Part shown: positions 10,801 through 14,345 of the stretch, one piece after another
Position numbering within the stretch: position 1 is the stretch's first letter
Layout of the letters: each line of letters opens with the position of its first letter
NCBI GenBank assembly: GCA_000388065.2
Contig: KB932206.1
From: Fonticula alba ATCC 38817
Lineage: Eukaryota > Protista > Nucleariida
Length of the DNA stretch: 28,129 nucleotides
Direction: 5' to 3' (one strand)
The notes under the pieces: model-generated
The model's input: only the letters and a program-made list of their open reading frames with translations
Database searches by the model: none
Told to the model about the DNA's origin: nothing
Program-made: the position numbers and the translations under genes

Positions 10801-13481
10801 TCCAACCTGCCGCTCAACTTCAAGACCACCGAGCCGGACGCCATTCTCCCCTTCACCTCGGCCCTGCAGTATGACGCGCATAACATCTATGGCGTGGCTG
10901 AGGTGCGTGCCTTTTGTGTCCCCTTTTCGCCGTGCCCCTCCCCCTGCCCTGCTTGCCGGCGGTGCCACCGCCCTGGACTGACGCGTTCGGCCCCGGCCTC
11001 GGCATGGCCATGCTCGGCGTCTCTCCCGGTCTTTCCCTCGCTTTCCCGCCGGCATGCAGACTATCTCCACGCGCAAGGCTCTGGAGCGCATCACCGGCAA
11101 GCGTGCCTTTGTCTTGAGCCGGTCGACCTTCCCGGGCACCGGTGCCCACGCCGGTACGCCAATGCCCCCTGCCAGGGACCATGTGTCCTCCTTTCCTGCG
11201 CGCGCACACGCAGAAGCATCCGCACCCGCGCTGACCTCCGCCTCGGGTGTCCCCTTGTCACGCCTGTCCATATGTGCGTGTGTGTGTGTGTGTGTCTGTG
11301 ACTCGGTTTGCCAAGGCCACTGGACGGGTGACAACTTCTCCACTTGGGACCACCTGTACCTGTCGATCCCGGGCATGCTCCAGTTCCAGCTGTTTGGCAT
11401 CCCCTATGTCGTACGTGCATTGGCGCCCACTGACGCCCTTCCCTCTGGCCCGGGGCCTGCGACACCCGGCCGGCGTCGCCTTCATCCCCCTGCTGACGTG
11501 CTGCCTTTTCTCTCTCTTTCTCTCTCTCTCTCTCCCTCTCTCTCCTCGGGGCGACCACCTCACCGCGAATGACTCACCAGGGGGCCGATATTTGCGGCTT
11601 CATCGGCAACACCAACGAGGAGCTGTGCGCTCGGTGGACTCAGCTCGGCGCGTTCTATCCCTTCGCCCGGTGCGTGCACGCCCTCCGAGGCTGGCCTCAA
11701 GGAAAAGCCCTCTTTCCTGACACGCGCACGCGTGCACCCGGACACCGCCCCCCCCCCCCCCCCCCCCCCCCCCCCCCCCCCCCCCCCCCCCCCCCCCCNN
11801 NNNNNNNNNNNNNNNNNNNNNNNNNNNNNNNNNNNNNNNNNNNNNNNNNNNNNNNNNNNNNNNNNNNNNNNNNCCCCCCTCGCCCGTCTCCTCTCGGCTA
11901 CTGACCTGCTGCTGGGCACGGCGCAGAGCTCGACTGGCCGGAGCCCGAGCGCTACGTCTTCACCAATGAGGGCGACAAGGTCCTCCTGGAGCCGGAGATC
12001 TTTGTCCAGTACCTCCGCGACCACAATGCCCTGTCGATGACGTGCGACTTCCGGACGGTCAACTTTTCGGAAATCCTCCGCTACGGCGAGCACTCGGTTC
12101 CCAATGGCACCATTTGCACCCTGGTCCGGAAGTGCTCGCTGCTGAAGCTGGACGACCCGCCGCCCATCTCCCGCACTCGGCGCCTGAGCCAGCTCCAGAA
12201 GGAGAAGGGCGAGGAAATCGTCGAGAATCCCCTGGAGTCTATCCCCATAGTGCCGGTCCCCTCGGTGCCCAGCACCAGCCCGCCCCCCCGGCCAAGCAAG
12301 TAGTCGGCTTGTCTCCCTTTCCATTTGTGACCCACGTTGTTCGCGCACTCGCTCTTTCTGTCCCCCCCCCCGCAGGCGGGCCCCACGAAAAACCCCCCTT
12401 CCCGACCCCCCGCCCCCGCCCCCCGCCCCCCCCCCCCCCCCCCCCCACACACACACACACTTACACCACTACCTACACCCATTTATGGGCACACATACCC
12501 TCCCTCCATGGCCCCGGTCCATTCGCCCGCCATCGACAGCAATCACAATGCCATCAACAACGCCTCGCAGGAGCCGTACCTGTGGGAGTGGGTGGCCGAG
12601 TCGGCCCGGCAGTCGATCGCCCTGCGGTACTCCCTGTTCTCGGTGTACTACACGCTCTTTGAGCGCGCACATCGCACCGGTGACCCGGTCATGCGTGCCC
12701 TCTTCCTGGAGTTCCCCCACGATCCGGAAACCCATGCCATTGACAAGCAGTTTATGCTCGGGTGCGTGGGCCGCCCCTTTGCGCTGGCCCGGCGCACGCG
12801 CCCTTGACGGACGAGGGCTGCCTTGGCGCCTTGTCGCGGGCCCTCGCTCGCTCGCTCGCTCGCTCGCTCGCCCGCTCGCCACCCTGCGCCCTCCTCCCAT
12901 CCCTTCGGACCTGGATGCTGACACCTTCCTCGCCCCTCGCCCGGGCATATTCCCGACCGGCCCATCGCAGGTCGTCCCTCCTCTTCACGCCGGTGCTGGA
13001 GCCCGGCGCCGAGTCGGTGCTCGGCTACTTCCCGGCCGGGGTATGGTACGACTTCCACTCGGGCCAGGTGACCACCAGCTCGTCCACCGGGGCATGGCTC
13101 ATGGTCAAGGCCCCGCGGAATGTGAGCCCGGTGCACGTGCGTGGCGGGGCCATCATCCCCCTGCTCAAGAGCGAGGGGGCCCTGGTGCTGGAGGACGTCA
13201 TCAACTCCGAGTACGAGCTGCTGGTGGCCCTGGACGCGCAGGGAAATGCCCGGGGCAGCCTCTTCCACGACGACGGCGAGTCCCTGCCCCCGGGCCGGAA
13301 CACCCGTGTGGAGCTGGTGGCCCAGTCGAACCCGAGCACCGGGACCGTGTCTCTCCACTGCTCCGGGGTCTTCGACTTCCCGGTCCCGGCTTTGGTGCGC
13401 CGCGTGACCGTCCTCGGCAAGGAGCGCCGGTCGATCGAGGTGAACTTGAGCCTCAACCGCCCGTGGCACATCACCTTCTGA
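7830..13481 (+). CDS. Secreted/lysosomal acid alpha-glucosidase, glycoside hydrolase family 31, with N-terminal P-type trefoil domain. Exons 7830-8057, 8163-8309, 8500-9000, 9155-9311, 9416-9699, 9932-10072, 10251-10435, 10538-10902, 11060-11153, 11316-11410, 11581-11669, 12540-12761, 12971-13481; about 1005 aa after a one-base correction
   Basis: Signal-like [15 protein letters not shown]. Trefoil [19 protein letters not shown]...APWCF. GH31 motifs [35 protein letters not shown], nucleophile LWVDMNE (Asp 10549-10551), SRSTF, acid/base HWTGDN (Asp 11330-11332), GADICGF, FYPFARNHN, QFMLG, WYDF. All junctions are phase-compatible GT-AG except exon 1/2 (see findings). Confidence 0.95.
7959..8202 (+). 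other. P-type trefoil domain of the GH31 enzyme, split by intron 1
   Basis: C-x-R-x-DCG-x-GIT-x-EC-x-RGCCW...PWCF pattern typical of trefoil domains in GAA/MGAM-type GH31 enzymes. Confidence 0.85.
8401..8459 (+). repeat. C59 homopolymer in GH31 intron 2
   Basis: Directly visible in the sequence. Confidence 0.95.
11748..11798 (+). repeat. C51 homopolymer in GH31 intron 11, abutting a gap
   Basis: Directly visible in the sequence. Confidence 0.95.
11799..11873. other. Assembly gap (75 N) inside GH31 intron 11
   Basis: N run. Confidence 1.
11927..12303 (+). CDS. Orphan coding exon of unknown gene X ([41 protein letters not shown]...PRPSK), lying within GH31 intron 11
   Basis: Branch CTACTGAC (11898-11905) and acceptor GCAG| at 11926, phase 1. 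The 124 following codons have typical GC3-rich codon usage. Not GH31 sequence, and out of frame with GH31 exon 11 (phase 2). Ends at TAG 12301-12303, or splices from AA|GTAGTC (12300) to a strong acceptor at 12375. Confidence 0.8.
12843..12870 (+). repeat. (CTCG)7 microsatellite in GH31 intron 12
   Basis: Directly visible in the sequence. Confidence 0.9.
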
Positions 13482-13607
13482 GAGGGCCGGGGGGGGGGGG
13501 GGGGGGGGGAGGTGCCTGCCGTCGTCGCCACCGCCGCCGCCGGTGTTCCCGATCATTTTTGATTGTGGGCCTCGTGGGCCGCCTTTCTGCACAGGGGCCT
13601 GGGGACC

Positions 13608-13613
13608 AATAAA
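13608..13613 (+). terminator. Putative polyadenylation signal AATAAA of the GH31 gene
   Basis: AATAAA about 127 nt downstream of the GH31 stop, in otherwise GC-rich DNA. Confidence 0.55.
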
Positions 13614-13952
13614 CCAGATTACCGCGCAGGGCAGGCCACGTGTTCTCCGGCGGCGCAGATCGCGCCGGATCTTTCGCGGTGTGTGTGTGTGTGCGGGTGG
13701 GGGTGCACTTTGCGGCGGGCAGCCAGGGCCGGAGGGCGGAGATGTCCCCGCGACGTGCCCCGGGGCTGGGACATAAGGGCGCCCGCCGATTGGGCCGGGG
13801 GCCGGCCGATCGGCAAGAGCCTCTCTCTCTCTCTCTCTCTCCCCCCCCCCCCCTGAGACGCGTCTTGCCCCCTGCTACTTCTGCCCTTTTCCCTCGCCTG
13901 GACCCTTTCCTTGCCCCCTGCCCCCCCCCTCCCCCCATCCGCACGCGCCACC

Positions 13953-14040
13953 ATGACGAACGGCTGGGAGAACTACGAGTTCGAGAAGACGAACTACTAC
14001 TGCCGGCACCAGTCCACCCCCTTCGACTTTATCCGCTGCA
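13953..14040 (+). CDS. First exon of unknown gene X (MTNGWENYEFEKTNYYCRHQSTPFDFIRC)
   Basis: GCCACCATG Kozak context, 29 protein-like codons plus 1 nt, then donor GTGCGT at 14041 (phase 1), matching donors used elsewhere in the window. A gap follows. Confidence 0.75.
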
Positions 14041-14094
14041 GTGCGTGTGGTCCTCCTTTGCGCGCCCTTTCGGTGCTCGCCCTTGCCCTTTGCG

Positions 14095-14239
14095 NNNNNN
14101 NNNNNNNNNNNNNNNNNNNNNNNNNNNNNNNNNNNNNNNNNNNNNNNNNNNNNNNNNNNNNNNNNNNNNNNNNNNNNNNNNNNNNNNNNNNNNNNNNNNN
14201 NNNNNNNNNNNNNNNNNNNNNNNNNNNNNNNNNNNNNNN
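14095..14239. other. Assembly gap (145 N)
   Basis: N run. Confidence 1.
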
Positions 14240-14240
14240 G

Positions 14241-14345
14241 CCCCTCCCTCCCCCCCGTGCTCTCTCCCCCCCCCTCTCTCCCCTTTCAGCCCCGCTCCGT
14301 GCAATAGAGCCATCCCCCCCCCCCTCGAAACCATTGCCCGAGTGA
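14241..14345 (+). CDS. Possible Pro-rich 3' end of gene X (PLPPPRALSPPLSPLSAPLRAIEPSPPPSKPLPE*)
   Basis: Open frame ending in TGA 14343-14345. C-rich DNA reads Pro-rich in any frame, so support is weak. Confidence 0.3.
   Translation, partial: PLPPPRALSPPLSPLSAPLRAIEPSPPPSKPLPE

What the first reader, a model, noticed from the sequence alone, without database searches (positions are those of the whole stretch)
11670..14345. Two genes appear interleaved and out of order: exon 2 of gene X sits in GH31 intron 11, upstream of its own ATG exon
Seen: GH31 exon 11 (...FYPFA-CG|, phase 2) joins exon 12 (|C-NHN) across 870 nt, whereas the other 11 introns are 102-232 nt. Inside lies a non-GH31 coding exon (11927-12303) with its own branch point and a phase-1 acceptor, and no ATG exon is visible in front of it. 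Downstream of the GH31 stop, a Kozak-perfect ATG exon (13953-14040) ends in a phase-1 donor and runs into a gap. Joining these gives a continuous reading ...[18 protein letters not shown] further acceptor at 12375 leads into a poly-C run, and the sequence after the 14095-14239 gap is open and Pro-rich to a stop at 14345. Inference: the true order is probably [..11798]-[12447..14094]-[11874..12446]-[14240..], with the 11874-12446 block mis-joined through C homopolymers; removing it shrinks intron 11 to about 222 nt, within the normal range. If long reads instead confirm the order, this would be a scrambled gene needing trans-splicing or back-splicing. The phase match alone has a 1-in-3 chance probability.
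Basis: partly seen in the sequence, partly recalled or inferred. Interest (0 to 1): 0.8.

Follow-up and report, generated by a model that had tools for sequence, protein, structure and literature searches.

The report
Two genes interleaved by assembly mis-ordering
Transcripts show that both genes are normal, and the apparent interleaving most likely arises because a small piece bounded by unreadable runs of C was put in the wrong place in this draft Fonticula alba genome; this was not confirmed with independent DNA.

Summary
The GH31 alpha-glucosidase gene joins exon 11 (ends 11669) to exon 12 (starts 12540) across an 870-nt intron. The other introns are about 100-230 nt. Inside that intron lies a coding exon (11927-12303) that is not part of GH31.

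A cDNA contig from the same organism joins 13900-14040 directly to 11927-12369, without mismatch. It gives a 154-aa open reading frame with the same codon bias as GH31. This "gene X" has no detectable homologue and is not annotated in NCBI.

The genome is the only public Fonticula alba assembly (GCA_000388065.2).

- **Breakpoints:** all three breaks needed to restore a normal gene order fall on N gaps or long poly-C runs. The chance estimate for that is about 0.006.
- **DNA evidence:** no DNA contig bridges any of the three breaks.
- **Other RNA routes:** nothing supports a back-splice. The intervening and upstream regions have no RNA, and the two intron halves are not complementary.

I could not get independent DNA, so the order is inferred, not proven. 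Most likely true order: GH31, then gene X downstream (about 0.75).

First readers of this scan noted some 40 other out-of-order exon cases in the same genome. Those notes are unchecked.

The parts
7830..13484 (+). GH31 alpha-glucosidase gene (trefoil domain, N-terminal mutarotase-like domain, TIM barrel, C-terminal domain), 13 exons. NCBI annotates it as a 950-aa product.
   Evidence: Pfam hits lie in profile order. tblastn of homologues is collinear. A 3127-nt cDNA contig covers it.
11581..11669 (+). GH31 exon 11 (...[12 protein letters not shown], ends in phase 2)
   Evidence: RNA joints 11410>11581 and 11668/9>12539/40. Matches PF01055 positions 259-288.
11670..12539 (+). GH31 intron 11 as assembled: 870 nt, GT..AG. 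It holds C51, a 75-N gap, the gene X exon 2 block and C21.
11748..11873 (.). C51 run followed by an assembly gap of 75 N (breakpoint 1). The next contig starts with CCCCCC.
   Evidence: Logan DNA contigs stop here.
11874..11926 (+). 3' half of the gene X intron, with a branch-point-like tactgac and the acceptor AG at 11925-11926
   Evidence: Sequence. The RNA joint lands at 11927.
11927..12303 (+). Gene X exon 2: phase-1 start, 124 codons, TAG stop at 12301-12303
   Evidence: cDNA contig X5 record 10. Codon-position GC. Translation.
12304..12369 (+). Gene X 3' UTR as far as the cDNA contig reaches. The contig ends at a C10 run.
   Evidence: record 10, 11927-12369
12395..12446 (.). C-rich stretch ending in C21 (breakpoint 2). 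This is the only disputed join that has no N gap.
   Evidence: The reads tool masked it as a repeat, and no listed DNA contig crosses 12371-12474.
12540..12761 (+). GH31 exon 12 (R-NHNAINN...)
   Evidence: RNA joints. PF01055 positions 289-328 and the start of PF21365.
12971..13484 (+). GH31 last exon and TGA stop. The 3' UTR carries AATAAA at 13608-13613.
13900..13952 (+). Gene X 5' UTR as seen in cDNA. There is no RNA cover at 13612-13899.
   Evidence: record 10 and the depth table
13953..14040 (+). Gene X exon 1: ATG in a gccaccATGa context, 29 codons plus 1 base. The donor GT is at 14041-14042.
14041..14239 (.). 5' half of the gene X intron (14041-14094), then an assembly gap of 145 N (breakpoint 3). 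The exon 2 block most likely belongs here.
   Evidence: This placement is an inference.

Best explanation
The window comes from the draft Fonticula alba assembly GCA_000388065.2. Two ordinary same-strand genes lie next to each other: a 13-exon GH31 alpha-glucosidase and, just downstream, a small two-exon gene (gene X, 154 aa, lineage-specific, not annotated). Introns in this genome carry long poly-C runs that the original reads could not cross.

Three such runs or gaps act as one collapsed repeat in the assembly graph. Two loops hang on that repeat: [GH31 exon 12 to gene X exon 1] and [gene X exon 2]. The assembler walked them in the wrong order. The likely true order is A(..11747)-polyC-B(12447..14094)-x-polyC-block(11874..~12425)-polyC-D(14240..).

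Shown: both mRNA junctions, that gene X is coding, that GH31 is collinear, and where the ambiguous sites lie. Inferred: the genomic order.
For: (1) cDNA contig 13900-14040|11927-12369 with 0 mismatches at canonical GT/AG sites. The GH31 cDNA contig skips 11670-12539.
(2) The spliced RNA has one 154-codon ORF, with GC3 of 0.89-0.97 and GC2 of about 0.4, as in GH31 exons.
(3) GH31 loses no residue across the 870-nt intron.
(4) Re-ordering brings intron 11 from 870 nt to at least 221 nt and gives gene X an intron of at least 107 nt. The other 11 GH31 introns are about 100-230 nt.
(5) All three required breakpoints contain an N gap or a homopolymer of at least 18. The chance estimate from the rest of the window is 0.006.
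(6) Five of the 7 gaps in the window abut poly-C or poly-G.
(7) No DNA contig, whether from the assembly's own runs or from a 2025 run, bridges 11733-11874, 12371-12474 or 14094-14241. So nothing I could see in the public reads supports the assembled order.
(8) The block's DNA word depth (83.7) is not raised against its neighbours (104-157), so there is no sign of a second copy.
(9) About 40 first-reader notes describe out-of-order exons elsewhere in this genome. These are unchecked leads.
Against: There is no independent DNA evidence for the proposed order. Only one assembly is in the collections, two metagenome scans found nothing, and the Logan contigs break at the homopolymers.

The join between the block and GH31 exon 12 carries no N gap. 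The original assembler asserted that join through C21, so the explanation requires a chimeric contig, not just a scaffolding slip.

The left gap has C on both sides (C51 | N75 | C6). That also fits a true adjacency inside one long poly-C run.

The contig end at 14094 is not itself poly-C.
Confidence: 0.75

Rival explanations
1. This is an assembly error of another kind. The exon 1 island (about 13854-14094) belongs in the 75-N gap, so the whole of gene X is nested, in sense orientation, inside GH31 intron 11.
For: It also makes both genes collinear with the RNA. The island starts with C13 at 13841-13853, which could be the tail of the C51 run. It keeps the gap-free join between the block and exon 12. 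Logan contigs also break at 13813-13862.
Against: It needs a chimeric join at (CT)10C13, which reads of a few hundred bases should cross. Intron 11 would be over 1.2 kb, five times the largest of the other introns. A sense-strand gene with its own 3' end inside a highly expressed host's intron would cut host transcripts short, yet GH31 cDNA depth is 108 against 17 for gene X. The 290 nt between the GH31 poly(A) signal and 13900 would also lose its obvious role as the gene X promoter.
Confidence: 0.1
2. The assembled order is real. Gene X is split, with exon 2 in GH31 intron 11 upstream of exon 1, and its mRNA is made by trans-splicing of two separate primary transcripts.
For: The assembly as deposited shows this order, with no N between the block and exon 12. 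The junction uses canonical donor and acceptor sites and exon 2 has its own branch-point-like motif. Many other 'out of order' notes exist for this genome, if they are taken at face value.
Against: All three boundaries sit exactly where the assembly is blind. The two intron halves show no excess complementarity of the kind seen in Giardia split introns: duplex energy -24.8 kcal/mol against -30.4 +/- 4.3 for shuffles, with 459 of 500 shuffles as good or better. I know of no precedent in Holomycota (own knowledge). The 870-nt intron is an outlier that disappears on re-ordering.
Confidence: 0.03
3. The assembled order is real and the junction is a back-splice (circular or scrambled RNA) from a GH31 read-through transcript.
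For: The junction runs from a downstream donor to an upstream acceptor on the same strand.
Against: cDNA cover is zero at 12370-12538 and 13612-13899, and GH31 cDNA ends at its AATAAA. Exon 1 carries its own 53-nt 5' UTR and the contig has the layout of a linear mRNA: UTR, 154-codon ORF, UTR.
Confidence: 0.01
4. There is a collapsed duplication. A second copy of the exon 2 block (or of exon 1) lies in a gap, so the copy in the intron is a silent duplicate.
For: Gap lengths are only estimates (program's note to the finding). The cDNA would map equally well to either copy.
Against: DNA word depth of the block (83.7) and of the exon 1 island (29.6) is lower than that of neighbouring unique sequence (104-157), not doubled. 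No unique repeats flank the pieces.
Confidence: 0.05

Closest known systems
Local mis-ordering or chimeric joining of contigs at unresolvable repeats in draft short-read or pyrosequencing assemblies
   Same: The pieces are bounded by N gaps and long homopolymers. Re-ordering restores collinear genes and normal intron sizes. The same type of problem was noted many times in this genome by first readers.
   Different: One of the three joins (block to GH31 exon 12, through C21) is inside a contig and not at a scaffold gap. The sequencing platform was not established here.
Trans-spliced split genes (Giardia HSP90 and dynein; Drosophila mod(mdg4), lola) - own knowledge
   Same: The mature mRNA joins exons that are not collinear in the reference sequence, at canonical splice sites.
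   Different: In those cases the genomic arrangement is verified independently, and in Giardia the intron halves are extensively complementary. Here the arrangement is unverified and complementarity is absent.
Back-spliced circular RNAs (exon scrambling) - own knowledge
   Same: A downstream donor is joined to an upstream acceptor, relative to the assembly.
   Different: No transcript covers the intervening region, and the RNA looks like a linear mRNA with its own UTRs.
Genes nested in introns of a host gene
   Same: A foreign coding exon lies inside a GH31 intron in the assembly.
   Different: Only the second exon is inside, so a complete transcription unit is not nested unless the exon 1 island is also moved (rival 1).
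Eukaryotic GH31 acid alpha-glucosidases with a trefoil domain (GAA / sucrase-isomaltase type)
   Same: The host gene has Trefoil, Gal_mutarotas_2, the GH31 TIM barrel and the GH31 C-terminal domain in the usual order, with the WVDMNE nucleophile motif and FYPFARNHN across the exon 11/12 join.
   Different: Only 30-59% identical to the nearest library proteins over the aligned exon-sized pieces. Nothing unusual otherwise.

Membership tests
Assembly order error at unresolvable repeats | Every breakpoint needed for the re-ordering lies at a gap or a repeat that the reads cannot resolve | tested here: met
   Breakpoint 1: C51 plus N75. Breakpoint 2: C21. Breakpoint 3: N145. Chance estimate 0.006.
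Assembly order error at unresolvable repeats | Re-ordering restores collinear genes supported by transcripts | tested here: met
   The cDNA junctions 14040|11927 and 11669|12540 are both collinear in the proposed order. Intron sizes become normal.
Assembly order error at unresolvable repeats | Independent DNA (long reads, PCR or a second assembly) shows the alternative order | not testable with these tools
   The Logan DNA contigs listed (8 longest shown of 33 laid for X1; all 8 for X9) break at all three sites. Only one assembly is held. Metagenome scans were empty.
Trans-spliced split gene | Non-collinear genomic order verified independently of the assembly in question | not testable with these tools
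   Same limits as above
Trans-spliced split gene | Complementary intron halves that bring the two pre-mRNAs together (Giardia type) | tested here: not met
   RNAduplex of 14041-14094 against 11874-11926: -24.8 kcal/mol, weaker than the shuffle mean of -30.4.
Back-spliced circular RNA | A precursor transcript spans from upstream of the acceptor to the donor | tested here: not met
   Zero cDNA cover at 12370-12538 and 13612-13899 in X5. This rests on contig-level data from one run.
Nested intronic gene | A complete transcription unit (promoter, first exon, 3' end) lies inside the host intron | tested here: not met
   Exon 1 and its 5' UTR lie 1.4 kb beyond the end of the host intron in the assembly.
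GH31 glycoside hydrolase (host gene) | GH31 TIM-barrel domain with the nucleophile motif, plus the N- and C-terminal beta domains | tested here: met
   PF13802, PF01055 (profile positions 1-328 in order over the exons) and PF21365. WVDMNE at 10543-10560.

The most novel reading that the evidence does not exclude
The deposited order is correct. Fonticula alba makes the gene X mRNA by trans-splicing: a short exon 1 transcript, started downstream of GH31, is joined to an acceptor that sits in GH31 intron 11. The many other 'out of order' genes in this genome could then be of the same kind.
Probability: 0.03. Interest if true: 0.85.

Novelty: not a real feature. Interest (0 to 1): 0.15.

Why it matters
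The biology is ordinary. The result has practical use, though.

- **Local error flagged:** it points to a probable order error in the only public Fonticula alba genome, a reference species for the origin of fungi and of aggregative multicellularity.
- **Missing gene recovered:** it recovers an expressed 154-aa gene that is absent from the annotation.
- **Method for other cases:** cDNA junctions that "go back" on the assembly could sort out the many similar cases flagged in this genome.
- **If the order were real:** it would be the first case I know of (own knowledge) of trans-splicing of a split nuclear gene in Holomycota. A cheap PCR test would settle it.

Tried and rejected
- **Homologues of gene X:** none found. 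I tried Pfam and NCBIfam, the 5.8-billion-protein word search with exon 2, the ESM Atlas, which gave only chance-level hits with recognition below threshold, and PDB sequences. AlphaFold on exon 2 alone gave pLDDT 44, which is unusable, so I ran no fold search. I could not search the full spliced 154-aa protein, because it has no reference and I did not type it in.
- **Independent DNA:** two metagenome-contig scans with degenerate patterns (exon 2 start; GH31 exon 12 start) each gave 0 hits. Short GH31 fragments in the protein collection were at most 40% identical. The representative search found no close relative. The neighbouring gene led to a single NCBI assembly.
- **RNA raw reads:** run X23 laid 0 reads, so it is no test.
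- **Repeats:** I looked for unique direct repeats or target-site duplications around the block and found only low-complexity matches.
- **Exon 2 as a GH31 cassette exon:** rejected. Joining exon 11 to 11927 shifts the frame and hits a stop after 14 codons (frame 1), and no such junction is seen in the cDNA.
- **Literature:** the top-ranked of 23 papers matching 'Fonticula alba' and 'genome assembly', the only one read, reports a new assembly of Acrasis kona, not Fonticula alba.
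Full report
**What the window is.** The minus-strand ORF at 14563-16548 is 100% identical to NCBI protein H696_04083 of Fonticula alba. 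That protein is encoded on scaffold KB932206.1 (2.53 Mb) of assembly GCA_000388065.2, the only place in the collections that holds it. The window has about 65-72% G+C, 7 N gaps and 30 homopolymer runs of at least 10 bases, including C59, C51, G39 and C28. Five of the 7 gaps abut a C or G run.

**The GH31 gene.** Pfam places Trefoil, Gal_mutarotas_2, the GH31 TIM barrel and the GH31 C-terminal domain on successive plus-strand exons. TIM-barrel profile positions run 1-47, 47-88, 92-152, 227-258, 259-288 and 289-328. tblastn of full-length homologues is collinear. Residues 796|797 of P0026, 658|659 of P0032 and 831|832 of P0081 fall exactly on the join between 11581-11669 and 12540-12761.

A 3127-nt cDNA contig from run X5 (organism A, 2012) shows the joints 11410>11581 (170 nt), 11669>12540 (870 nt, GT..AG) and 12761>12971 (209 nt). 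The other introns, read from the exon map, are about 100-230 nt. NCBI annotates the gene as a 950-aa product spanning window positions 7830-13484. So the 870-nt intron 11 is a clear outlier, and GH31 itself lacks nothing.

**The foreign exon and the ATG exon.** Positions 11927-12303 read LDWPEPERY... to a TAG stop. Positions 13953-14040 read MTNGWENYEFEKTNYYCRHQSTPFDFIRC plus one base. GC by codon position is 0.34/0.38/0.97 and 0.61/0.42/0.89, the same pattern as the GH31 exons.

The decisive result is a 584-nt cDNA contig in X5 (record 10, word depth 16.8). It lies on 13900-14040 and then directly on 11927-12369, with no mismatch and no ambiguity in the cut ('goes back 2114'). The join sits at a GT donor (14041-14042) and an AG acceptor (11925-11926). 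It gives a single 154-codon ORF with a 53-nt 5' UTR and at least 66 nt of 3' UTR. RNA runs X5-X8, from two samples, hold 0.98 of the sampled words of 11900-12340.

X5 has no cover in any GH31 intron, so it is clean cDNA. NCBI annotates nothing between GH31 and H696_04083.

**What gene X is.** I found no family, homologue or solved relative, and a single-sequence AlphaFold model of exon 2 is unusable (pLDDT 44). It is best described as a small lineage-specific protein: an N-terminal part of about 110 residues with several cysteines, and a Pro/Ser-rich tail. Its function is unknown and I make no claim about it.

**The genomic order.** Call the pieces:
- A: up to 11747
- block: 11874 to about 12425
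- B: 12447-13853
- E1 island: 13854-14094
- D: from 14240

The RNA requires A to splice to B, and E1 to splice to the block.

In the assembly the order is A-block-B-E1-D. The three junctions that must change to give A-B-E1-block-D are C51 plus N75, C21, and N145. If the poly-C runs are treated as one collapsed repeat, the assembled order and the proposed order are the two possible walks through the same graph, with two loops on one repeat node. Without spanning reads an assembler cannot choose between them.

In the rest of the window, intervals of the same sizes contain a gap or a homopolymer of at least 18 with frequencies 0.175, 0.143 and 0.258. The joint chance is 0.006.

The Logan DNA contigs break at exactly these places. 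Those from the assembly's own 2012 runs (X1) cover 11552-11733, 11874-12371, 12474-12833, 13863-14094 and 14241-14817. Those from the 2025 run X9 behave the same way. None listed bridges a disputed junction. DNA word depth of the block is not raised, which argues against a collapsed duplicate.

After re-ordering, GH31 intron 11 is 77 nt + poly-C (at least 51) + 93 nt, so at least 221 nt. The gene X intron is at least 54 + 53 nt plus the unread part. Both are in the normal range.

**Alternatives.**
- **Nested gene.** Moving the E1 island into the first gap would nest gene X in intron 11. That needs a false join at (CT)10C13, gives an intron over 1.2 kb, and puts a sense-strand 3' end inside a highly expressed host. 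I rate it about 0.1.
- **Back-splice.** This is contradicted by the lack of RNA at 12370-12538 and 13612-13899, and by the linear-mRNA layout of the contig.
- **Trans-splicing on the assembled order.** This cannot be excluded without DNA evidence. However, the intron halves are not complementary, and the coincidence of all boundaries with blind spots speaks against it. I rate it about 0.03.

**Context from the scan.** First readers left about 40 notes of out-of-order exons in this genome, including EXS, capping enzyme, PSD/PPWD1, an RNF10-like gene and a sirtuin, plus a similar 'nested gene or misplaced contig' note 2.6 kb before this window. These are unchecked and I did not test them. They fit a systematic assembly problem better than a biological one.

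**Limits.**
- The genomic order is inferred, not observed.
- Only one read-laying run was available. The RNA raw-read run chosen (X23) laid no reads, so it is no test.
- Two metagenome scans were empty.
- No second assembly is in the collections, and the one Fonticula paper I read describes none.
- The junction itself was inspected in one cDNA run (X5) only.

**Verdict.** The interleaved, scrambled arrangement is most probably not a real feature of the genome.

Noticed in passing
window 13900-14040 + 11927-12369: Gene X (154 aa, two exons, expressed) is not annotated in the NCBI record. No gene is called between the GH31 gene and H696_04083. It has no detectable homologue anywhere I searched.
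   Followed up: partly
window 7959-8054: The GH31 enzyme starts with a signal-peptide-like stretch and a trefoil (P-type) domain (Pfam E = 3.7e-9). This is the domain layout of animal lysosomal acid alpha-glucosidase.
   Followed up: partly
window 8401-8459, 11748-11798, 21365-21445, 27501-27539 and others: Very long poly-C and poly-G runs (up to 59 bases) sit in introns and between genes, and 5 of 7 assembly gaps abut such runs. They are probably the main cause of gaps and order errors in this assembly. Their true lengths are unknown.
   Followed up: partly
window 14560-16698 (minus strand): H696_04083, an 856-aa hypothetical protein with no Pfam hit, has good coding periodicity and a 'HVRRGD' motif. 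That motif recalls motif I of GT11-type fucosyltransferases (from memory, not tested).
   Followed up: no
window 11874-14094 (runs X9-X15): DNA runs of 2025 labelled with another organism hold 37-54% of the sampled words. In the one run laid (X9) differences from the window were few, 9 substitutions over about 2.3 kb laid. A soil, a sediment and a compost metagenome hold 10-40%. Near-identical Fonticula DNA therefore seems to occur in other samples. This is of interest because, to my knowledge, the species is known from very few isolates.
   Followed up: no
window 12304-12375: The cDNA contig of gene X ends at a C10 run (12362-12371) with no obvious poly(A) signal before it. The real 3' end of the mRNA is not known and may lie beyond the poly-C.
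   Followed up: no
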